Positions 1,735 through 40,631 of a stretch of DNA of 64,000 nt are shown here, piece after piece; positions within the stretch are counted from its first letter, which is position 1; every line of letters starts with the position of its first letter. The DNA comes from Botryllus schlosseri. Its lineage: Eukaryota. The notes below the pieces were generated by a model. That model saw nothing but the letters and a program-made list of their open reading frames with translations. It had not been told where the DNA came from and did not search any database. The translations under genes and the position numbers were made by a program. Location: positions 8,494,001 through 8,558,000 of the forward strand of contig CM119372.1 in assembly GCA_051294905.1 (NCBI GenBank), written 5' to 3'.

Positions 1735-2319
1735 GTGGAAAACTATAGCTAGTCTTCGCAGCCTAATTCATGTCCCCTATACCTTACCTTTGTCAGAAAG
1801 GGTGTCTTTCGTTGTCGTGAGAATAGTGTCAAAATATTTCGCCATTTTGACGGTGAACCTGAAGCGTAGAGAGAATCGTGGAAAAATAGATCCTTGAATC
1901 GACAGAAGATGTTGCCTGCTGATTCTGTGATTTATTATACTGTGAATACTTAGACTTACTTTTATGTGCATAAATTCAACTTATTACGGCAAGAAATTAA
2001 GTATTTGCTCTTGTGACATACATTGCTCAGAGTGAATTGTTTTACTCTGGGATAACAATCCAATACGTGTCGTATGCAATCAGTCAGCTTGTCTTGAATG
2101 GGTCCTTGGAGAATAGATGACTCACAATCACACTGCTGGGAAAAATCACAAAGATGGACGTAACTCTGATTTTTAACAGCTTACGTATATCGGTAGCGTA
2201 AATCGAAAATACATTAATTCGCAAATTCATCGAGTTGTCTTCGTATCGGGCCAGGACAGAGACATTTCCCGGCGATCTTCGTGTGGGAGAATCTGATATT
2301 ACGGCATAATTTGCGTACC

Positions 2320-3308
2320 ATGACCGCAGTTGTAGTAAGTCATAAGTACGGAAACGCGAAAGGAAGCTTCGAAGAAAGCAACTTCTCCAGAGGTCGCGAT
2401 TTCTATGAGGAGTACGCCGCCGGGAAGAGCGTTGAATCCAGCACCACCGACGATTCGTGTTCGGACAATTCAGCCAGCGTGTCAGGCCGAGAGTTACAAG
2501 ACTCGCCGTCTCACGTCCACCAATTACAGACAGGTGGTTTGGGCTCGGGGCACGGCAAGGAGATGAGTAGTAGGGTAGGGATTCCCCCTCTCGGTTATTA
2601 TCCGTACGACCACCACCAATTCAATCAAGAACAGTACCGGGCGAGGCATCAAATGCCGTTTGCGGTACCATTTCCTCAAGAAGGTTACGGTGTATCGGCG
2701 TTTAAACAACAGGAAGACATTGGCAGAGAGAGATCGAACTGCCAAATAGAATCAAGACAACACTCCGTTGATGAAAAGGACTTTAAACGAAACGGTCATC
2801 GAAAATACGCGTGTCTTGAGAGTACAGCGCAGGGTACCGGGAAATCGGACATCTTGGATAGCAACGGCGCATATCCGGTGTCGCAACACTCGCGTTTCGA
2901 CAGCTCCGGTCAAATTCAGGAGACTGCGTCGCAGTCTGAAAACATGGACACTTCCGCTATAAATTGTCTCATATCAACGGCTGATTCATACCGCAGAGAC
3001 ACTGCCCCGGCGGAGTCCATAAATAACGTTGCGCTCTTAGAAGCGAGCGTGTCCAAACCTTTATCGCCCTTCAACGCACAGTTTTCCCTTTCAAACAAAA
3101 GCGCTAATCAATCCGACGACACCGGATTCTCGTCGCCACAGTCTTCATCCGGCAGGACGTCACCGGACTTACTGTCGAAAAAAGACTCGAAGCAACCGGT
3201 CCCGAAAAACCCGAAAGTCAGCTCCATCCAAGCAAGGCTGGAAATGAAGCCGTTATGGGATCAGTTTAACGACTTGGGAACGGAAATGATAGTAACGAAA
3301 GTCGGGAG
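2320..3308 (+). CDS. Tbx1/10: Tbx1/10 T-box transcription factor, coding exon 1
   Basis: First ATG at 2320; ends ...[23 protein letters not shown](R), the T-box start; phase-2 donor AG|GTAGG at 3309. Confidence 0.93.
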
Positions 3309-4763
3309 GTAGGCGGAATTACTTATGTAACGATTGCCATACATTCGTCTTTTTACTGCGGCTTAATACCAAAAACAACAGTTGATTACTACAGATAAGA
3401 TAAGTGTCCAGGTGTTTATTGGCTGGTAATGGTAGGGACGCCGATATCAGAATTAATCGTTCTTGGTAAATCCGAAGTTTGAAACAAAGATAAAAGTAAG
3501 GCGTGTTGGTTCGGAATTAAAGTCGTAAACATTAATGGCCGATGTTTGGACCAACGGTTTCGTAATTCAGAAAAGGCCATTTGTTCAAACTTGTGAATGT
3601 AGTAGATCTTGCTTACTACAAATTAGCCTTTCTTACCGTTGCACACTATACTATCTTACACCACAGACCTAGCCATTGAACAAATTTCTTACCAAGCTTA
3701 CTATAAGGGTTAGACATGACCAAATTTCTCAGAATTGTTATATGGGCCGTACGCACTGGAGACACAACTCTCATTTATACCAAAAATATTATTTCTAATG
3801 GTTTAAAAAGCAATGGTTATATACTTAGCTTTTAATTCTGGATGTTTGTGGCTCACAATGCCACAATCAGGGATGTCCCCTATCACCCGAACCCACCAAT
3901 AGTAATGGTGATTCTTCTCCGGAAAATAGCTCAGAGCGATATATTTATACACCATCATTGACCGTGTTGCATTTCTTTGTACGAAAGTTTGGAGCGTGGT
4001 GCTGAATACCAGCAGGCGACTTGCTTAATAACACACAACCCAACAAAAACAACAGCAACATTGCTACGCAAAACATGGGTGACAAATTGGGCATTGTGGT
4101 GCCGTTTCGATTTATAATTGCTTATTTCGGACGATTCATATCGTCAACATTTCTTATCTTTTAATCTGTCACCTCATGTGACACTGACCAGTATGGACCC
4201 AAAATTTACGCCGCAGGTCCCGTCGAAGAAGATTGTGTGAATTCTATACATATCAGGGACATAGGAACAACAGTCATATACCGTTTAACTTTCTCCACGA
4301 CCTCTTTTTGTTACAGTGACACCAGCTATACACTAAATTGAATTCAGAATTCACATTAGCTATCCATATATTTCGTATCACAATGATTAGAAACAATTTT
4401 TGGTGGTTTGGAAACTATGTACTTTATTATGCAAAACGTAAATTCATAATACTCCATTCCTTTATTCAATCATATAACGTACCGGTATCGCACAATATCG
4501 AGTATGTCAATATCTAGTTTACTGGTACATTGATCCATCATTCTGTTCAAATTGTTGTATGACCCATCCCTCCAGTTGTGTCTGGTAGTCGATGTTATTG
4601 CTAAATAACAACGGCTTAATTCAGAATGATATACTCTCCCGAGTGATTGATTGATCGCGGTACCCGGACGCAAACAAGGTAAGAATCGCGAGCTGTATGC
4701 GCTCGTGTTCAGAACTTCGAATACACAGCGAGGAAACGAATTCTCTACTAGTTGCTGACGATT

Positions 4764-4797
4764 ACCCCTGACGAGTGTCAGCCGAAAATATTCGGGT
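4764..4797 (+). ncRNA. Minimal type I hammerhead ribozyme, intact core (repeat copy 1)
   Basis: ACCC-CTGACGA-G(TGTCAGC)C-GAAA-ATAT-TC-GGGT: all core nucleotides present, stem I ACCC/GGGT, palindromic AATATT stem III; upstream GCTGAC (4754-4759) is complementary to loop II GTCAGC (4777-4782). Confidence 0.8.
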
Positions 4798-7700
4798 TCA
4801 TTTCAATATGAATATACTATTTAATTGTATATTGAAGTTCTGTACCTCCAAGAAGCACTTCGTCCTAACGAATATTTCGCTAGTGTTCGAAAATTAAATT
4901 GTAACGGCAAACAGGACTTCATCTCACCAGTCATAGAAAACGCCATATAATAGTCAGATAACTGTATTGCAATCGTGCGTGTCGTTTAATATATTTCTGC
5001 GAGAATAATTTAGTCTTAGTCACAAGACTCGACTCTGCGTATATACACACTTTTGACACCTCATTTTGGTAGTAATGTACCAGTCGAGGGGGCGTTAAAG
5101 TCTCGGAACTGGTAGACAAAAGGTCTTTTATTGAAACAGTTGGCCAGATTTGCGATAAATTCCGGGGGATTGAACCAGATATAACTAGGCAAGTAGGCAT
5201 ACATTGGTATTAGGTGATTTATTTCGTAACGCTGGCATTGAATTTGCGTTTGGCTTTGAAATAGAGTGTTGTCATTGTCCGTTGACACTAGCAATAATGT
5301 ATTGTTACTCAAATAGGAAGTATATGCAACGGTGCATGTCTATTTTGTCCGATTGATGCCATCATTTCAATTTTTCAAAACTGTTTGCTCTAGCACCCAA
5401 ATCAAATATTGCATCTAGTTTGTTGATCGCTCGAGTCACTTTTCCTGCAATGTGCAGTGGTAAGATTTTGTATATTTGGCATGACCTATTTTACAAATAA
5501 TAATAGGACATATAATAAGAGCAATTATTGCTTATAATTATGTTAATATTATCTTAAAATAAATATTCTTATATACCCTGCCAAATATGTCGCAAACGTT
5601 GTAACATGATATGTATTGTCTCTTGCTAATGCGACACGTCGAATATTCAGTGGCTTCAAACTTTAGTCAACCTGTCCCAACGTCTCTAAAACGCAATAGG
5701 ATATATCTCGTTCACATAATATGCGACCTTTTCAGCGTGCGATATGCACCTCACAATAATTATAGACGCACATATTTCGAATAACAGCATATCTCATTCG
5801 AAAAATCTTTTCTTTCAGTGGTCAGAATTCACGCATGGTACATTACCGCGATAATCCGAAATAAACATTAAAAATACGCATGTCTTTACGAAACGTGATG
5901 CTGCGTGTGGACATTTTTTCCACACGCACGATTTATCTGGAATGTATATGGGTCCATTAATTGCTGTCTCCAATGTCGCTCCGGCTTACAGAAACCATAA
6001 CCAGTATCGACTGTTTATTATACCAAGCCTACTCGCGGAATGCAAACTTGCCAATTCCTGATCCCTTGCTCAGCCCATTTTTAAACACAAATTTCCAGCA
6101 AACAGAAGAGACGATCGCGGGCCCCTGGAACCCATCTCGCCAGCGCACCGCATCTTGTAGCCTATCAAGGAAATTGTCCGATAAGAATAATTTCGCATTT
6201 TATTGTTTACACGCGAACCTGGCGAGGCTCTGGATAAGTTTGACACTGGCGCGATGGCCGGGCGCGGAATATTTACGGGCATCAGACTTATCGCTCGAAA
6301 TCTGTGTAATGCGAATGAAATTTAAACAACGGACGGACAACGTCGGCCGGAGCAGATAACGCAGCGCGATGTAATACTTCTATCTGTTATACGTATTATC
6401 ACATTGACGAATTAGGCCACCATTTTGAATTTTGACATCAGGCGATTACACGTACAATCTTAAAGTGGTATATATGTTTTAAATGAAGATCTTAAATGTT
6501 AGTTCATCAGATTAAGTATAGGTTATCGTAACCAACATTGATAAATAACACACACATCGATGTATCCTGGACACATTTTATACTATGCCCTGTTGGGTCG
6601 TCTCGTGTTTGGTGTCAACAGGACATATAGTATAACATATCCTGGACATATTTGACTTAGTGCGTTTTGATAATAGATCAAAAATGCTTTCTGAACATAC
6701 CTTGTTGTGACTTTCATGACTAATGATTAAAACTAGTTATTATGCGCCATATGCCGCATTCGTAATTGGTAACAATGTTTAGTAGTATAGGTTGCATAAG
6801 GAATTTATTCTGAAAGGTAGGGATGAGCTTGGATCTGGATTTAATAATTAATTATAATAATAATAATTGGTTACTTGCGGAGTACAATTTGGGCATATAG
6901 AAATTGATAAAGACATTGTGCAAATCTATAGATTCACGAGTCAGTAATTTTGTATTTTGAAATATCATTTACGCCGTCACGTGACAGGATTTGTTCAAAT
7001 ACATGCCACAGCAATATATCGCGTAAATACTGAGGAATTATACCACATGTATTCAAAATGCTGTAGCTCGATCTAACTCAAACAAGCCTTTATTCATAAG
7101 GCTTGGAATGAAATGTATATATTTGCCAGTTTAAAATGAAACTAATTGGAAATAACTACACTTTATCACATAAACTATGGGAGATTCATACATGCCCACA
7201 ACCGCCTGAGTTCTATGCTACAAATCTGGTCATCGTAACAGTAGAGTTCACGCCCTTGTCCGCACTGGCAGTTTCGATTTCCCGTATACCTGTTTTTGTT
7301 ACGGATGCTTGAGCGTTACCCAAAATAAGAAAGAGAACAGTCAATTAGGAGTCCAAAGCTTTCCATATATGTCTCGCGCTCCAGTCAAACTCTTAGCGGC
7401 GGTCCGGCTGTCAAAATTCCGCGGCACGCGAACCAAGTGTGAGTCTTGCGAGATCGTAATCACCATTTTCCGCCGTGGCGAGTTAGGGCTGTACTTACGA
7501 AATATGATGAATGAAACTTTGGATTATATAGGAGACAGTGACGTTGTTATCTTCTCTTCTCGTTTTGCAAATTGGATCCGTTGTTTAGTATTCGTTTGTA
7601 AAGATCTCTATGAAATCAGTCCATATCTATATCCGAAATTTCGTAACTTACATATTATGCATAGAGGCGTAGCCAGGATAAAAATGGTGAGGGGCGAATT

Positions 7701-8675: not shown

Positions 8676-8792
8676 GAGAATGTTCCCGACCTTCCAAGTT
8701 AACCTATTCGGAATGGATCCTTCATCTGAGTACATACTGATGGTGGATTTCGTGCCGGTCGACGACAAGCGATACCGATACGCTTTTCACAG
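8676..8792 (+). CDS. Tbx1/10: Tbx1/10 exon 2 (T-box)
   Basis: CACAG|G AGA ATG TTC...: [38 protein letters not shown]; phases 2/2. Confidence 0.97.
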
Positions 8793-8858: not shown

Positions 8859-9015
8859 TTCAAGTTGGCTTGTGGCCGGCAAAGCCGATCCGTCCATGCC
8901 CCCTCGAATACATCGACATCCAGACTCTCCCGCCAAGGGATCGCATTGGATGAAGCAGATCGTGTCTTTTGATAAGTTGAAGCTCACCAATAATCTGTTG
9001 GACGATAAGGGCCAT
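8859..9015 (+). CDS. Tbx1/10: Tbx1/10 exon 3 (T-box)
   Basis: [53 protein letters not shown]; TNNLLDD is the Tbx1/10 subfamily signature; 66-bp upstream intron; GTGAGT donor. Confidence 0.97.
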
Positions 9016-20990: not shown

Positions 20991-22609
20991 GACTCATATC
21001 TCGGGTAACTGTGGCATTGTGGCATAACTCCATCTATAATTATGTGCTATCAAACATCAATTTATTAATTATAGACGCAGAGGAATAAAAATAGGCAAAT
21101 TGCGGCGGAAACCACTGTATGATGGTCGGTGATTTTGCTATCAAATGCCTAGCCGGGCATGCATTTTCGTGCACCAGCGGCACTCATAACAAGAGCTGGC
21201 CAAAATCGAGCACCTGAGAGATTCGGTTTGCAATAGACTATTATCGGCTTCGAATGGAGTGTACCGGTATCACGACAGTATGGGTGATTTGGAAAGTTCA
21301 AATCTGTACTTACAAACAATAATGCGAGCTAAACCCTACTATAAAGATAATTCGGCAATTTTTCGACCATGAAAATTTCATTGTGTTTTGAGAAAATGCT
21401 GGGGATTATAGGCACTATATATATTTCACATAAATGTCGTTGCTCTTAACGTACATGACTTTGTGTTGTTGAGGGTGTTGAAAATCGATCGATGGCAATA
21501 TGGTTTTTGCAACAAAAATGAGATCATGTATGAATAAACGAGATCAGTGCCCCTTTCCAAGTTCTATTTATGAATGCGATACTGGATCTTTAGATGACCA
21601 AATTCCACTATAGCTCTCGCCTTCAAATTTGAAATCTTTGCCAACTTAAATTGTAATTAAGGACATCATTATTTCTCCCGGTACTGTGTGCCATCTCAAT
21701 AAACTTCTCATTCCGTCCTGAAGACGGATGCCCGAAGACAAACAAACCGGCAACCTCAGTTTAATCCCATTATTTGCCTATAGTCGCATGCGCATTCATT
21801 CTAGCGAACAGCTTCTGCGAGAGTGTCATAATCGCGCGCGCACACTTGAAATTTCTCAACTCGGAAAATCTTCGGCAAACACCGGTCCAGATATGCGCCT
21901 AAAAAGCTACTCACCGCGGCTTCGCACGTTTAGCGGCAGCGCGAAAACTTCGGTTCGCCTCCGTTCCAACAGCCCGCGCAGATGGGTGTGTTTGTCTACG
22001 TGCGTGTCGGTCCGTGACTGAGATTACCCGGTACGGTGCGACCTCGCCAATTGGAGTTGAGCCCGGGAATTAGCTCGACGTTCGGTAAACAAATCGCATT
22101 CGACATAAATCGCGTCACCTTGAAAAGGATAACGGGTGCTGGCGATCGCGCGGGCGATAATCGCAACAAAAAGGAATTTCTTTAACACCTGTATGTCTAA
22201 GCTCCACGCTTGGCCGCTAAGGGATGCGGCGCGGCCGCGGGCAGGCCAGGTGTAACCGGAATCGGTGGTGAAGGATGGGTAAAAGCTGTTGCGTTGGGCG
22301 TTCGCGGTATGGGAAGTGGGGATTGCGGCCGTTTTTACTCGGAAACGGTGCCTTTGATAAAGGTGTGAATCTTTACGTTGCGCTCTTGCGATGTATTGGT
22401 TGATTGACGCGTATAGTCGGCGGTGGTATCGTTTTGCTCATTGATATTTTACTATTTCAATAATGCTCCGACAAGACGCAATATTTTCGAGCTGACACTC
22501 ATCGGGAACAATCGCCAGTGTGTTTGTTCGAATTTTTATGCATGCGACGTCGTAATTACGGCTGTTGATATACAAAATAGATTCGAATTCTCTACAGTTG
22601 CTGGTGATT

Positions 22610-22644
22610 GCTCGTGATCAGTGTCAGCACGAAAATGTTCGGGT
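22610..22644 (+). repeat. Degenerate hammerhead-bearing repeat, copy 2
   Basis: GTGATCA-GTGTCAGCAC-GAAA-ATGT-TC-GGGT; CTGACGA box mutated; flanks 22562-22715 homologous to the other copies. Confidence 0.7.
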
Positions 22645-24567
22645 TTATTTCGAGTATATGGATAATGAATTATTCAATTGTGTATTGAAGTTATGTGCCG
22701 CCTAGAGTCACTTCGAAAAATGAAATTCTCCTTTTCAAATGGGGCCAACCAACGTCAAAGCAGTGTGGAATTGTGTGATCGCATATTGTGAGCATTTAAA
22801 ACTCTATAAACACTTCATTTTGGTATACCTCAATCTCACAAATACCACAATCTAATTAAACCAAGGACATCACTCCAATCTTCGCAAGCGACGATGCGAA
22901 GAATTTCTGCAACTATATATGCCGAATCAGAGTTCGACAACTTGAAATGTTCTGCTTTTCCAAAATAGATTAGACTTAGAATTATAGCTACATAGTTTTT
23001 TTTCCCAAATTAAACTAGAACTAGGATTATATACTCAGTTTTTTTAAAAATGAGATTATAATTAGAATCACTGAATTCGCGATAACTTGGAAATTGAATT
23101 CAAGTTCAATTCATATCGTATCTAATCAGAGTTCATTATCATAAGCAGAAACAGTTTGAGCCTAAAAACATTTCACAAATTATTACATTATAATTAGATT
23201 ATTAGATTAGGCATTTCGCTCTAATTAGTATAATAAGAAAGCCACTCGCGATACGCTTTATTCGCTTCTGAAATATTTCGTACATAACTTCAGTCGGGCA
23301 CATTTGATATTCGACACCGTGCACACCCGATACTTGTCATACACATGTCATACCGCCACGGGAATATAGTCACTAGCGCGCTGGTCCGCTTACATCCGTT
23401 GCGTTCAAGCTGAGATATTCTTGGAGAGAGAGATAGGGAGAGTAAAGGGTATCGTTCGGTGGGCCGGCGCGGAACTCAAACGCACGAGAGACAGCGGTAC
23501 CTGAGCGTGAACTGAATCATCAGAAATCTTCGTGGGTGTCTGCGTAGCGAGATGCGGTTTGGTTTTTAAAGCGAGCGGCCGCGAGCGTCTTAATTTAAAA
23601 CATTAACAATGCTTCTCCGCGCTAAACTAACAACAGGTGGACGGATTCCAACCAGTCGATCAACTTATTTGTCATCGAATACTAAACCCTCACTCATCCT
23701 TGACATCTATTCCCGTCCCATATTCTCCTACGGCAGAACAAGGTCGCGTCGTATAGGGCGATACCGCACAATAACAACAACAACAATTGCGCAACTCGCC
23801 TTTTTGCTTTCAAGGTTGTTTATTCGATTCCAAATATATGAGAATCAAGAATAACACACAGGTCGCGACTTTAATACACTCGTGTGAATACAGAACATCA
23901 GCTGACCAGCATAGGACATTGGGACACGGGCGTAAAGCCAAGCCAAGCCTAGTTCATTTTTTATGTGAAGTGACGCCAGGCATAGATTAATACCTTGACG
24001 CAATGAGGTAATATGACATCACAATGCATAAAGTGATGAATTTGGGAAGTGTTTTTTCTCTCTTGCTGTTGAGCTTGAAGTCTAACTTATATTATAATGA
24101 CATTGCTAGTTAAGGTCATAAATTTTAGAAACCTATACATTCGACGAACAGTTGTATCTTTCAGTGCCTTCTGTCTTTGTGCATATTTGTGGCGCATTAG
24201 TAGCCTATATACGTGGCGATTATAGGTAAAATATTTGAGACTTGAAATGATTCCAGTGCTAAACTTAGTATATACAAATGGTAACCAGAGTTGTACAAAC
24301 TATATCAATCTAGTTAGTCAACTAACTACTGGATATTTGAGGAGTTCTAGATCTAGTTCTAGCTACGGATGGATATTGACAAGTGAGTATAGTTCTAGTT
24401 CTGGTTCAAAATTTTAAAATACGGTAGTTTGTACAAGCCTGATGATCAGTAACGCATTCGCTACAAACAAAATAACCTCAAACTCGCTGTACGTACGGTA
24501 CCGATGTACCCGCGAGCACGTGAATATTGAAGACGAAGGCAAAAATACTTCTTTAACCACCCATAAG

Positions 24568-29287: not shown

Positions 29288-29980
29288 AGATGTTCTGAAT
29301 GGATATAGTTGGTTGTCGCTTGCATTTTGCATTAAAAAGTCTCGATATTATATCGGATTGTGTGTGTGTGCCTGCCTTGGATAAAGTTTTGCAGTACACA
29401 TTTTGCGCTTATATCGCGCAAGGGCCATATGTTGTGTCCGACTACAGTCGCTGCGTATACTGAAATAGAGGAAGTATAGTCGGATTACATATCTTGCATC
29501 TCGATATAGTGTATAGTCAGGGATGGCTAACCTTTTTTATGCAACTGGTCCTTAATGACATAATCAGGAAAAACAATGTGGGTATAGCCTATAGTAGAAT
29601 TTATGCTGTGTCAACATCAAGGTTAAACCTGCTGCAGAACACTGATTGTTAGTTGTTACAATACGTACTTTTCTCAAATTCCTGACACTCGCTCCTTCTA
29701 AATTTCATGTGTGACAACAAGGGCTCGCGTGAATATGTACGACCGTACATAGTTCGCAAAGTTTCCTATCTAGTTGCAAACGAGGTTGTAAAGGGACTTC
29801 ATCATGAGAGATTTACTGTCGATATGTTATGCCCTCCGACGGTGAGCAGATTGCAGCATTGCCGATCGAATAGCGAGTTTCTGAATTCTAACCATTTTCA
29901 ACCCATATATAAATCTGAAGAGCTTCTTGGAGGTACATAACTTCAATATACAATTGAATAGTATATCCACATTGAAATGA

Positions 29981-39993: not shown

Positions 39994-40481
39994 CTGAATC
40001 GAAAAGATGCTTCGGCGTCGGACCAAATACATAAACTCGTTCTCTCGAAGCGGATGATTATGCACAGAACGACCTTCCTCGACTAATAGTCTCTAGTTGT
40101 TATGACTATTTCACTAGCAAAAGTGATGCAAACATTTTCCAAAACCGCATTCTAAATAATACAAAATCGAAAATGTGGCTTCCAAACCATAACATCGAAT
40201 TTTGTAATCATAACCCCTCTGGAAATCAGTGGCAGGAGATAAAACCCACTTCAGTAATTCGAATAGTAGATATAAACCGCAAATGACTCGTCATCATAAT
40301 CTTTGCAGCAATTCGTTGCGTTGCGTGAGGTAGGACCGGGGGCAGAGTCCTCTCCGTCCCTACAAATTGCCGCAGAATTTGTGAAATAACAGGGCATGAC
40401 ACAGCAGCTATCAATTGCAGTGAAACAACCATTTTTCAACAATCCAATATACAATTGATCAGTATACTCCTATTGAAATAA

Positions 40482-40515
40482 ACCAGAATAATTTCGGCTG
40501 ATACTCGTCAGGGGC
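40482..40515 (-). ncRNA. Hammerhead-bearing repeat, copy 4 (core intact, stems weakened)
   Basis: GCCC-CTGACGA-GTATCAGCC-GAAA-TTAT-TC-TGGT on minus; sense within the last CDAN1 intron; homology spans about 40441-40591. Confidence 0.65.
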
Positions 40516-40631
40516 AATTGTTAGCAACTAGTAGAGGATTGGAAAGAACATTGTATATCAACAATCGTATCACAAATACGACGTCACCAGCACGAACAAT
40601 CTCGCGGTTTCGCATGGCCAAATCCACTCAC

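What the first reader, a model, noticed from the sequence alone, without database searches (positions are those of the whole stretch)
4739..4861. Intact minimal hammerhead ribozyme with a pseudoknot, sense in Tbx1/10 intron 1
Seen: ACCC CTGACGA G-TGTCAGC-C GAAA ATAT TC GGGT contains every type I hammerhead core base (CUGANGA, GAAA, UH), a 4-bp stem I, a 1-bp stem II and a palindromic AATATT stem III. The upstream GCTGAC (4754-4759) pairs perfectly with loop II GTCAGC. Predicted cleavage is after C4793. Established: minimal hammerheads with short palindromic stem III occur in Penelope-like element pLTRs and non-LTR retrozymes and can cleave as dimers. Inference: this is a retrozyme or pLTR family of about 175 bp with four copies here, and the best-preserved copy could cut the nascent Tbx1/10 pre-mRNA.
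Basis: partly seen in the sequence, partly recalled or inferred. Interest (0 to 1): 0.85.

Follow-up and report, generated by a model that had tools for sequence, protein, structure and literature searches.

The report
Truncated Penelope retrotransposon end with hammerhead
The 123-bp repeat in the first coding intron of a Tbx1-like gene is a recent, dead, 5'-truncated copy of a very abundant Penelope-like retrotransposon; it carries that family's hammerhead ribozyme motif, one of about 2,500 identical copies in the genome, so the locus is ordinary, though the motif's knotted helix II may not have been described.

Summary
This is not a 175-bp retrozyme. It is the last 69 nt of the 3' UTR/pLTR plus a 54-nt ORF "tail" of a 2,692-bp Penelope-like element (PLE). 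That element encodes RT plus GIY-YIG and shows tandem units, a fixed 3' end, variable 5' truncation and inverted partner copies.

The exact 44-nt motif occurs 2,539 times in the genome, against 0 for the control. Other first readers of this scan flagged the same family elsewhere in this genome.

The upstream GCUGAC/GUCAGC pairing holds up. At least ten PLE families here keep a 6-bp helix at the same position, with compensatory changes at four of its six pairs. It sits where helix II should be, stacked on G10.1:C11.1, with a 1-nt crossing.

Stem I covaries, and helix III stays palindromic or near-palindromic.

There is no sign of efficient cleavage. Bulk RNA-seq reads span the predicted cut with no pile-up of ends, and the monomer's lowest-energy fold is inactive.

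Cleavage of Tbx1/10 pre-mRNA is unlikely to matter. Rfam models miss the motif. The knotted helix II may be an undescribed hammerhead variant.

The parts
4739..4861 (+). 5'-truncated insertion (123 bp) of a Penelope-like retrotransposon. It corresponds to positions 2570-2692 of the 2,692-bp unit.
   Evidence: 99-100% identical to family copies; fixed 3' end and variable 5' end across copies.
4739..4807 (+). Last 69 nt of the element's 3' UTR / pLTR, holding the hammerhead motif.
   Evidence: In the tandem array the same stretch starts 77 nt after the ORF stop.
4754..4759 (+). GCUGAC, the 5' strand of the pseudoknot helix (proposed helix II positions 10.2-10.7).
   Evidence: compensatory changes across families.
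4764..4767 (+). ACCC, the 5' strand of stem I.
   Evidence: Sister families extend stem I to 6-8 bp, with compensatory changes.
4768..4774 (+). Core box C3-U-G-A-C-G-A9. Its UGA (4769-4771) is also the in-frame stop just ahead of the element's ORF.
4775..4783 (+). G10.1, one unpaired U, GUCAGC (the 3' strand of the pseudoknot, 4777-4782) and C11.1.
   Evidence: a 9-nt spacing between A9 and G12 is shared by thousands of copies in several families.
4784..4793 (+). G12-A-A-A15.1, palindromic helix III AAUAUU (4787-4792) and C17. The predicted cut lies between 4793 and 4794.
   Evidence: Sister families have AAGCUU.
4794..4797 (+). GGGU, the 3' strand of stem I.
4808..4861 (+). PLE 'tail': the first 18 codons of the RT-EN ORF. 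The ATG at 4808 begins 15 nt after the predicted cut.
   Evidence: tblastn residues 1-18. The tail concept is from PMC11167929 and PMC8557442.
29917..30127 (-). Older copy (211 bp, 91%), with the core inactivated (GAAA to GCAA).
40445..40596 (-). Older copy (153 bp, 89.5%) that ends at the short-tail position (family position 96).
22527..22714 (+). Old copy (about 190 bp, 74%). Its core reads GUGAUCA, a C3G plus G8C double change.
2300..3309 (+). First coding exon of the host T-box gene (approximate start). It ends in ...[19 protein letters not shown] followed by a GT donor.
   Evidence: best match to a solved structure is TBX1, 4a04.
8863..9015 (+). Downstream T-box exon ([26 protein letters not shown]). 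Another T-box exon lies at about 8690-8790.
   Evidence: TBX1 E=1e-24 against TBX5 1.5e-18.

Best explanation
The stretch 4739-4861 is a young, dead-on-arrival, 5'-truncated insertion of an abundant canonical (C-terminal endonuclease) Penelope-like retrotransposon. It was made by target-primed reverse transcription that started inside the element's ORF, which explains the 54-nt 'tail', and stopped after 123 nt.

It carries the family's hammerhead motif by descent. That motif has the type I strand order. Stem I is short. Helix III is a 6-nt palindrome that cannot close on itself and would need a second copy. Helix II is not a hairpin. Only G10.1:C11.1 is local. The other six pairs are made with a strand lying 8 nt upstream of C3, and one nucleotide crosses back. 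This is an H-type pseudoknot that also ties the far ends of helices I and II together.

Shown here: the element's identity, the motif, and covariation of the pseudoknot and stem I across PLE families. Inferred: in active, tandem or read-through transcripts the ribozyme cuts 15 nt before the ORF's AUG to define the RNA's 5' end, probably with help from protein or a second copy, as reported for other PLE hammerheads. In the Tbx1-like intron the copy is most likely an inert passenger.
For: Element identity:
- A tandem array has a 2,692-bp period with units 100% identical, each holding an 859-codon ORF.
- The ORF matches RVT_1. It has a C-terminal GIY-YIG-like motif, with a weak Pfam GIY-YIG hit at the right place.
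- Its nearest Atlas clusters are animal RT/GIY-YIG proteins.
- Copies share a fixed 3' end at family position 121-123 and have 5' ends anywhere from 0 to -788.
- Inverted 5'-truncated partner copies end at position 85-96, the short-tail end.
- These are the published PLE hallmarks (PMC8557442, PMC11167929).

Motif:
- The core is exact.
- The 44-nt motif has 2,539 exact copies, against 0 for the reversed control.
- The layout YUGANRA-G-N7-C-GAAA is enriched 20- to 100-fold over the control in sister families, with both C3-G8 and U3-A8 cores.

Pseudoknot:
- 10 of 13 recurrent families have at least 5 of 6 pairs.
- Four pair types occur at positions 1 and 5, three at position 2 (C:G, G:C and the wobble G:U), and two at position 4.
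- Own-family strands pair better than cross-family strands (5.2 against 3.5 pairs), and 0 of 20,000 permutations reach the observed total.

Other helices:
- Stem I shows compensatory changes: A:U to U:A, and G:C to C:G at 2.1:1.1.
- Helix III stays palindromic in AAUAUU and AAGCUU. AAGUCUU is nearly palindromic.

ORF start: the AUG begins 15 nt after the cut, and the core's UGA is the preceding in-frame stop.
Against: - No Rfam hammerhead model matches, even at E up to 10.
- The helix II hairpin that defines published hammerheads is absent.
- The monomer's lowest-energy fold (-12.2 kcal/mol, z = -1.26) is three small hairpins. One of them sequesters the core (CUGAC/GUCAG).
- The AAUAUU self-duplex is worth only -0.2 kcal/mol.
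- Bulk RNA-seq at about 170-215x depth shows no place where molecules begin or end at the predicted cut.
- The 5' ends of about 55 unselected genomic copies do not pile up at the cut site.
- Three recurrent families lack the upstream complement within the 15 nt I could see.
- G10.1 and C11.1 were fixed in my search patterns, so their conservation is not independently shown.
- The families are related by descent, so the permutation count is not a true probability.
Confidence: 0.85

Rival explanations
1. The conserved 6-bp helix is not helix II of an active ribozyme. It would be a separate or mutually exclusive hairpin: an off-state, or a binding or priming site for the element's protein. The hammerhead core would then be a weakly active or inactive relic, like the 'HHR_core' motifs reported in some PLEs.
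For: - The helix alone is the most stable single element (-7.4 kcal/mol), while stem I is worth only -2.4.
- No read ends pile up at the cut site.
- PMC11167929 reports that hammerhead mutants do not affect insertion in vitro and that no RNA-seq ends lie at the cut site in Anolis.
- PMC8557442 reports PLE clades that thrive without canonical hammerheads, and cores that do not fit stem/loop descriptors.
Against: - The core, C3-G8/U3-A8 covariation, stem I covariation and the palindromic helix III are all kept across diverged families. That is hard to explain without selection on the ribozyme fold.
- The helix abuts C11.1 with 0 nt between. It leaves exactly 1 nt after G10.1 and spans 6 bp. By established pseudoknot geometry (my own knowledge), a single nucleotide can cross the deep groove of a helix of that length.
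Confidence: 0.25
2. One reading: this intronic sense copy self-cleaves, alone or as a dimer, and cuts the nascent Tbx1/10 pre-mRNA enough to affect the gene.
For: The motif and its upstream pseudoknot strand are intact, and the copy is in sense orientation in the intron.
Against: - It is one of 2,539 identical copies.
- Most RNA-seq reads over the motif run on into unrelated flanks, meaning copies embedded in host transcripts, and they cross the cut site without a break.
- The other window copies are 17-25 kb away, older, and either on the other strand or mutated, so there is no partner for helix III.
- The AAUAUU duplex is very weak.
Confidence: 0.06
3. A non-LTR retrozyme: a short non-autonomous tandem repeat of about 175 bp that spreads through circular RNA.
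For: It has a type I hammerhead with a palindromic helix III. A 2026 preprint (10.64898/2026.07.22.740005) derives animal retrozymes from PLE pLTRs.
Against: - The window copies are dispersed and on both strands. They have different lengths with a common 3' end.
- The only tandem arrays found have a 2,692-bp period with a full RT-EN ORF.
- No unit-length back-joined reads were seen (table 5).
Confidence: 0.03
4. A foldback or MITE-like DNA transposon, with the repeat as its terminal inverted repeat and a chance hammerhead-like string.
For: Many loci show two copies in inverted orientation, 130-1,100 bp apart.
Against: - The two arms end at different positions (about 90 against 123).
- Solo copies have variable 5' ends.
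- The sequence continues into an RT-EN ORF in tandem units.
- Inverted 5'-truncated partners are a known PLE feature (PMC8557442).
Confidence: 0.01

Closest known systems
Minimal hammerheads of metazoan Penelope-like elements (Cervera & de la Pena 2014, PMC4209133; Lunse et al. 2017, not readable here)
   Same: - It lies in the pLTR of an RT/GIY-YIG element.
- It has the type I strand order, a short stem I (4-8 bp) and G10.1:C11.1.
- Helix III is a tiny palindrome, implying action as a dimer.
- C3-G8 and U3-A8 core variants occur in the same genome.
- There are thousands of dispersed truncated copies.
- The total helix II length of about 7 bp matches the 'larger than usual' 6-8 bp reported.
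   Different: - Published motifs have helix II as a local hairpin, with an extra nucleotide between A9 and 10.1.
- Here only 9 nt separate A9 and G12, so no hairpin can form.
- Six of the seven pairs are made with a strand placed upstream of stem I. The single unpaired nucleotide follows G10.1.
- The papers I could read describe PLE hammerheads as lacking tertiary contacts (PMC6155905).
Poseidon PLE of Anolis carolinensis, PAc (Frangieh et al. 2024, PMC11167929)
   Same: - Tandem units, and a hammerhead at the pLTR-ORF junction.
- Copies end inside the start of the ORF (the 'tail') at two alternative sites.
- Both DNA strands are used, giving inverted copies.
- No RNA-seq ends lie at the cut site.
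   Different: - In PAc the start codon lies before the cut site (the cut is 26 nt into the ORF), and reverse transcription starts 111-118 nt into the ORF.
- Here the cut is 15 nt before the AUG, and copies end about 25 or 54 nt into the ORF.
- PAc has a conventional stem II and loop II.
Hammerheads with rearranged connectivity (type-SGC and others; Eckert et al. 2023, PMC10085705)
   Same: One strand of stem I is joined directly, by 0-4 nt, to one strand of stem II. This may hold the two helices side by side in place of loop-loop contacts.
   Different: Those RNAs reorder the conserved core segments and come from metagenomes. Here the core order is the ordinary type I order, and only the 5' strand of helix II is displaced.
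Animal non-LTR retrozymes (Cervera & de la Pena 2020, PMC7229834; Li et al. 2026 preprint)
   Same: Type I hammerhead with a palindromic helix III; evolutionary link to PLE pLTRs.
   Different: Retrozymes are short tandem repeats without an ORF that give circular RNAs. These copies are dispersed, truncated ends of an autonomous element.
Ribozymes placed just upstream of a start codon (HDV-like in R2 and other non-LTR elements; type I hammerheads in RNA viruses, PMC13725137)
   Same: The predicted cut lies a few nucleotides (here 15) before the first AUG of the element's ORF.
   Different: No test of translation or of cleavage was made here. This is only an analogy.

Membership tests
Hammerhead ribozyme (type I, PLE minimal variant) | Conserved core: C3-U-G-A-N-G-A9, G12-A-A, the A15.1-U16.1 pair, and H17 | tested here: met
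   every core base is present at 4768-4793.
Hammerhead ribozyme (type I, PLE minimal variant) | Positions 3 and 8 form a pair (C-G, or U-A in PLE variants) | tested here: met
   sister families carry CUGANGA or UUGANAA, each 20- to 100-fold over the control.
Hammerhead ribozyme (type I, PLE minimal variant) | Stem I formed by the flanks, supported by covariation | tested here: met
   ACCC/GGGU here. Sister families have AUUCCC/GGGAAU, UUCGCUA/UAGCGAA, ACUG/CAGU and ACUC/GAGU.
Hammerhead ribozyme (type I, PLE minimal variant) | Helix II as a local hairpin (4 bp canonical; 6-8 bp in published PLE motifs) | tested here: not met
   Only G4775:C4783 can pair locally, because 9 nt separate A9 and G12. 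A covarying 6-bp pseudoknot with the 5' flank occupies the position instead.
Hammerhead ribozyme (type I, PLE minimal variant) | Very short, palindromic helix III | tested here: met
   AAUAUU here; AAGCUU and AAGUCUU in sister families.
Hammerhead ribozyme (type I, PLE minimal variant) | Match to a curated covariance model (Rfam Hammerhead_1, _3, _II, HH9, HH10) | tested here: not met
   no hammerhead family is reported, even at E up to 10.
Hammerhead ribozyme (type I, PLE minimal variant) | Site-specific self-cleavage after H17 | tested here: inconclusive
   RNA-seq shows no pile-up of read ends at the predicted site. The test would miss cleavage below about a fifth of molecules, or cleavage products that are unstable. 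No biochemical test is possible with these tools.
Penelope-like element (canonical, C-terminal endonuclease) | Single ORF with reverse transcriptase followed by a GIY-YIG endonuclease | tested here: met
   RVT_1 scores above its cut-off. The C-terminal 'VVYEY...YVGRT...RL..R..QH' motif gives a Pfam GIY-YIG hit at E=0.02, below the cut-off. Atlas neighbours carry RVT_1 and GIY-YIG.
Penelope-like element (canonical, C-terminal endonuclease) | Tandem or partial-tandem copies that create pseudo-LTRs | tested here: met
   Array with a 2,692-bp period.
Penelope-like element (canonical, C-terminal endonuclease) | Frequent 5' truncation, and an adjacent inverted 5'-truncated copy | tested here: met
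Penelope-like element (canonical, C-terminal endonuclease) | Optional 30-40-bp 'tail' at the end of insertions | tested here: met
   Copies end either at family position 85-96 or at 121-123.
Non-LTR retrozyme | Short (about 170-400 bp) head-to-tail tandem repeats, each with a hammerhead, and no ORF | tested here: not met
   The copies are dispersed, on both strands and of unequal length. The parent unit encodes RT-EN.
Non-LTR retrozyme | Unit-length circular RNA | not tested
   No unit-length back-joined junction appeared among the joints, but the stretch laid was not designed for this.

The most novel reading that the evidence does not exclude
The Penelope-like elements of this genome use a hammerhead in which helix II is knotted. 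Its 5' strand sits upstream of stem I, and a single nucleotide crosses the groove from G10.1 to the far end of the 3' strand. One helix would then replace both the stem II hairpin and the loop I/loop II tertiary contact. If so, this is an undescribed natural hammerhead topology. It would explain why these motifs escape Rfam models and stem/loop descriptors, and perhaps why some PLEs are reported to have only an 'HHR_core'.
Probability: 0.4. Interest if true: 0.6.

Novelty: new variant of a known kind. Interest (0 to 1): 0.4.

Why it matters
As a locus it hardly matters. It is one of thousands of dead ends of a common retrotransposon, and nothing suggests it affects the Tbx1-like gene.

As a class it is more useful. 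A whole set of PLE families keeps a hammerhead core whose helix II is built as a pseudoknot with the 5' flank. If that fold is active, three things follow:
- It adds a new way to build the smallest known ribozyme.
- It gives a natural test of how tethering helices I and II substitutes for loop-loop contacts.
- It shows that current covariance models and descriptors undercount hammerheads in animal genomes.

The cut site 15 nt before the ORF's AUG also makes this family a convenient system for an open question: what are PLE hammerheads for? The candidates are 5'-end definition, translation, or nothing.

Tried and rejected
- **Rfam.** Scans at gathering scores (whole window) and at E up to 10 (4600-5000) gave no hammerhead hit.
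- **Diverged subfamily.** I searched for one using the 74% copy at 22530-22730. All hits were the main family, so its C3G/G8C double change is a single decayed copy, not a lineage.
- **Pfam GIY-YIG over the genome.** I tried this to collect other PLE families. It gave one unrelated hit only, because PLE endonucleases score below the model's reach.
- **Fetching more loci.** Sister families were therefore read from printed 35-nt matches, and the two flanks were joined by their coordinates.
- **'Fossil' test.** I asked whether genomic copies start at the cut site. Among about 55 unselected copies there was no peak (starts at family positions 54, 57 and 62, once each). RNA-seq loose ends at 3 nt after the cut (23 reads, mixed flanks) are suggestive only.
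- **RNA-seq read ends at the cut.** None were found.
- **Thermodynamic folding.** The active fold is not the lowest-energy one, and the pseudoknot cannot be scored by the tool.
- **Literature.** Lunse et al. 2017 (PMC5785218) could not be read, and the Cervera 2014 supplements are not held. I therefore cannot exclude that the pseudoknot variant was already drawn there.
- **Rejected readings.** The MITE/foldback, retrozyme and chance-motif readings were considered and rejected; see the rival explanations.
Full report
**1. Observation.**

Its parts are:
- stem I, ACCC/GGGU;
- the core box CUGACGA;
- G4775 and C4783 as the only local helix II pair, around the loop UGUCAGC;
- GAAA;
- the palindrome AAUAUU;
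- C4793 as H17.

GCUGAC at 4754-4759 is the perfect complement of GUCAGC at 4777-4782. The 34-mer never occurs in shuffles of the window, yet occurs twice at up to 3 mismatches. A BLAST of the region against the window finds four copies.

Rfam reports no hammerhead family, either at gathering scores or at E up to 10.

The copy lies between T-box exons on the + strand. The long first coding exon ends at 3309 with a GT donor, and further T-box exons lie near 8690-8790 and 8863-9015. Both exons tested match TBX1 best among solved structures. 'Sense, in the first coding intron of a Tbx1-like gene' is therefore correct.

**2. What the repeat is.**

The genome is a 495-Mb animal assembly; I did not verify the species. 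Genome-wide, the 123-bp stretch has many near-identical copies.

Aligning and cross-comparing 30 loci shows a sharp common 3' end at family position 121-123. The 5' ends fall anywhere from 0 to 788 bp further upstream. Extending the query shows hundreds of copies at 97% identity, and arrays with a 2,692-bp period.

One array (L043) has units that are 100% identical to each other. Each holds an ORF of 859 codons. The ORF has:
- a reverse transcriptase domain;
- a C-terminal GIY-YIG-type motif, with a weak Pfam GIY-YIG hit at the right place;
- nearest Atlas clusters that are animal RT/GIY-YIG proteins.

The 123-bp stretch starts 77 nt after the ORF stop and runs to the end of the unit.

Many loci also carry a second copy in inverted orientation, with the 5' ends facing each other. 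Those partners end at family position 85-96 rather than 123.

Tandem units forming pseudo-LTRs, heavy 5' truncation, an adjacent inverted truncated copy and an optional 30-40-bp tail are the published signature of Penelope-like elements (PMC8557442). The tail is explained by reverse transcription starting at two internal sites in the start of the ORF (PMC11167929).

In this family the first in-frame AUG is at window 4808. The window copy is therefore 69 nt of pLTR plus a 54-nt tail that encodes the first 18 residues.

The four window copies are separate insertions of 123, 211, 153 and about 190 bp, and of different ages (100%, 91%, 89.5% and 74% identity). There is no short tandem unit, so the retrozyme reading fails.

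**3. The hammerhead at family level.**

The exact 44-nt string, from GCUGAC to GGGU, occurs 2,539 times in the genome. The reversed control occurs 0 times.

Other PLE families of the same genome share the layout 'YUGANRA, G, 7 nt, C, GAAA':
- 1,473 matches against 76 control for the U3-A8 core;
- 1,447 against 15 for C3-G8 cores with N7 other than C.

I obtained two further families as loci by following positions given in earlier notes of this scan. The others I read from 35-nt pattern matches that include either flank.

**4. The pseudoknot.**

In all these families the six nucleotides just before C11.1 are complementary to six nucleotides that end 8 nt (9 in one family) before position 3. The sequences differ between families:

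| 5' strand | 3' strand |
|---|---|
| GCUGAC | GUCAGC (this copy) |
| ACUAAC | GUUAGU |
| ACUGGC | GCCAGU |
| UCUGGC | GCCAGA |
| ACUGAC | GUCAGU |
| CGUGCC | GGCACG |
| UGUGCC | GGCACA |
| UGUGCC | GGCAUA |

A small script on 13 recurrent families gave these results:
- Ten families have at least 5 of 6 pairs.
- Four pair types occur at positions 1 and 5, three at position 2 (C:G, G:C and the wobble G:U), and two at position 4.
- Own-family strands average 5.2 pairs, against 3.5 for cross-family combinations.
- None of 20,000 permutations reaches the observed total.

The families are related by descent, so that last figure is not a probability. The compensatory double changes stand regardless.

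Three families lack the complement within the 15 nt I could see. One of them always occurs as the inverted partner of an intact copy.

Geometrically, the 3' strand runs straight into C11.1 and the 5' strand would stack on G10.1. The one nucleotide after G10.1 (U, A or G) must reach the far end of a 6-bp helix. By established pseudoknot geometry (my own knowledge), a single nucleotide can cross the deep groove of a helix of that length.

The 3' end of the upstream strand joins the outer end of stem I through 0-4 nt. In sister families stem I is 6-8 bp, so the two helix ends lie at similar heights.

The simplest reading is that this helix is helix II, 7 bp in all. That matches the 6-8 bp reported for PLE hammerheads (PMC4209133). 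Here it is built as a knot that also tethers helices I and II.

Stem I covaries:
- the fourth pair changes from A:U to U:A;
- the pair next to the core changes from G:C to C:G.

Helix III is AAUAUU here. In sister families it is AAGCUU, or an interrupted palindrome such as AAGUCUU.

**5. Does it cut?**

I found no positive evidence.

*RNA-seq.* Raw reads from a bulk RNA run cover the pLTR end and tail at about 170-215x in both orientations. In 96% of them the read runs on into unrelated sequence, so they come from dispersed copies inside host transcripts. The start of the element's ORF has no coverage. No position qualifies as a place where molecules begin or end. This echoes the Anolis PLE, where no reads end at the cut site and cleavage needed the element's protein (PMC11167929).

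*Genomic copies.* The 5' ends of about 55 unselected copies do not cluster at the cut.

*Folding.* The isolated monomer prefers three small hairpins, including CUGAC/GUCAG, which hides the core. The pseudoknot helix alone is worth -7.4 kcal/mol, stem I is worth -2.4, and the AAUAUU self-duplex only -0.2.

Low intrinsic activity and a need for tandem copies or protein are what the literature reports for metazoan PLE hammerheads (PMC4209133).

**6. Mechanism proposed.**

*Shown:* the window element is a truncated PLE end. Its hammerhead-like motif, including the pseudoknot, is conserved by selection across PLE families.

*Inferred:* in tandem or read-through transcripts of active elements the motif cuts after H17. 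This leaves an RNA whose 5' end is 14 nt ahead of the AUG, since the core's own UGA closes the frame upstream. The role could be 5'-end definition or help with translation. Both have precedents:
- HDV-like ribozymes of non-LTR elements;
- type I hammerheads a few nucleotides before ORFs in RNA viruses (PMC13725137).

For the Tbx1-like gene, the copy is most likely a neutral intronic passenger.

**7. Novelty and standing.**

PLE hammerheads and their genomic spread are known. PLEs of amphioxus are in Repbase according to PMC11167929.

In the papers I could read, PLE hammerheads have a hairpin helix II and no tertiary contact (PMC4209133, PMC6155905). I did not find helix II built as a pseudoknot. 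The nearest parallels are:
- hammerheads whose stem I and stem II strands are directly linked (PMC10085705);
- PLE 'HHR_core' motifs that fit no descriptor (PMC8557442).

I could not read Lunse et al. 2017, so prior description cannot be excluded.

Several first readers of this scan noted the same family and the covarying pseudoknot in other windows of this genome. I tested that claim independently here.

Noticed in passing
window 22598-22650 (+): The oldest copy (74%) has the core GUGAUCA, meaning C3 to G together with G8 to C. Published work reports that this double change partly rescues cleavage. It also keeps stem I (GCUC/GGGU) and the pseudoknot (GCUGGU/GUCAGC) through wobble pairs. No other genomic copy shares these changes, so it may be coincidence in a decayed copy.
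   Followed up: partly
window 4768-4781: In this family only, loop II (GUCAG) is also complementary to the core's own CUGAC. This gives a core-sequestering hairpin (-5.4 kcal/mol) that is part of the lowest-energy fold. The upstream strand GCUGACGA also duplicates the CUGACGA box. Sister families with other pseudoknot sequences lack this, so it looks incidental rather than a designed switch.
   Followed up: partly
G000:C1:1187432/1187671, C2:2242969/2243246, C2:11863206/11863483 and others: A U3-A8 family recurs as a fixed inverted pair about 250 bp apart. One arm has an intact pseudoknot (..UGCC/GGCAUA, with a 3-nt UUG duplication before the core). The other arm has a broken one (GGUGCC/GAAACC). 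The whole inverted pair seems to have been amplified as a unit.
   Followed up: no
L043 7346 (3 nt after the predicted cut), table 7: 23 bulk RNA-seq reads match the element only from this position onward and carry mixed unrelated sequence before it. They may come from genomic copies, or RNAs, that begin next to the cut site. The local sample of genomic copies did not confirm a peak.
   Followed up: partly
L043 7321 to 7230, table 5: In a single-cell RNA run, 12 reads join position 7321 back to 7230 with a constant 22-nt insert between. This is probably a rearranged genomic copy that is transcribed, not a circle.
   Followed up: no
G000:C1:22034515, 22037293, 22040071: A second PLE family (pseudoknot ACUAAC/GUUAGU, stem I 7 bp, helix III AAGCUU, H17 = U) forms a tandem array with a 2,778-bp period.
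   Followed up: no
window 29884-29970 (-): A tblastn match with the element's N-terminus extends to residue 32 (56% identity). This is beyond the usual 18-codon tail, so the copy may have a longer 3' end than the family norm.
   Followed up: no
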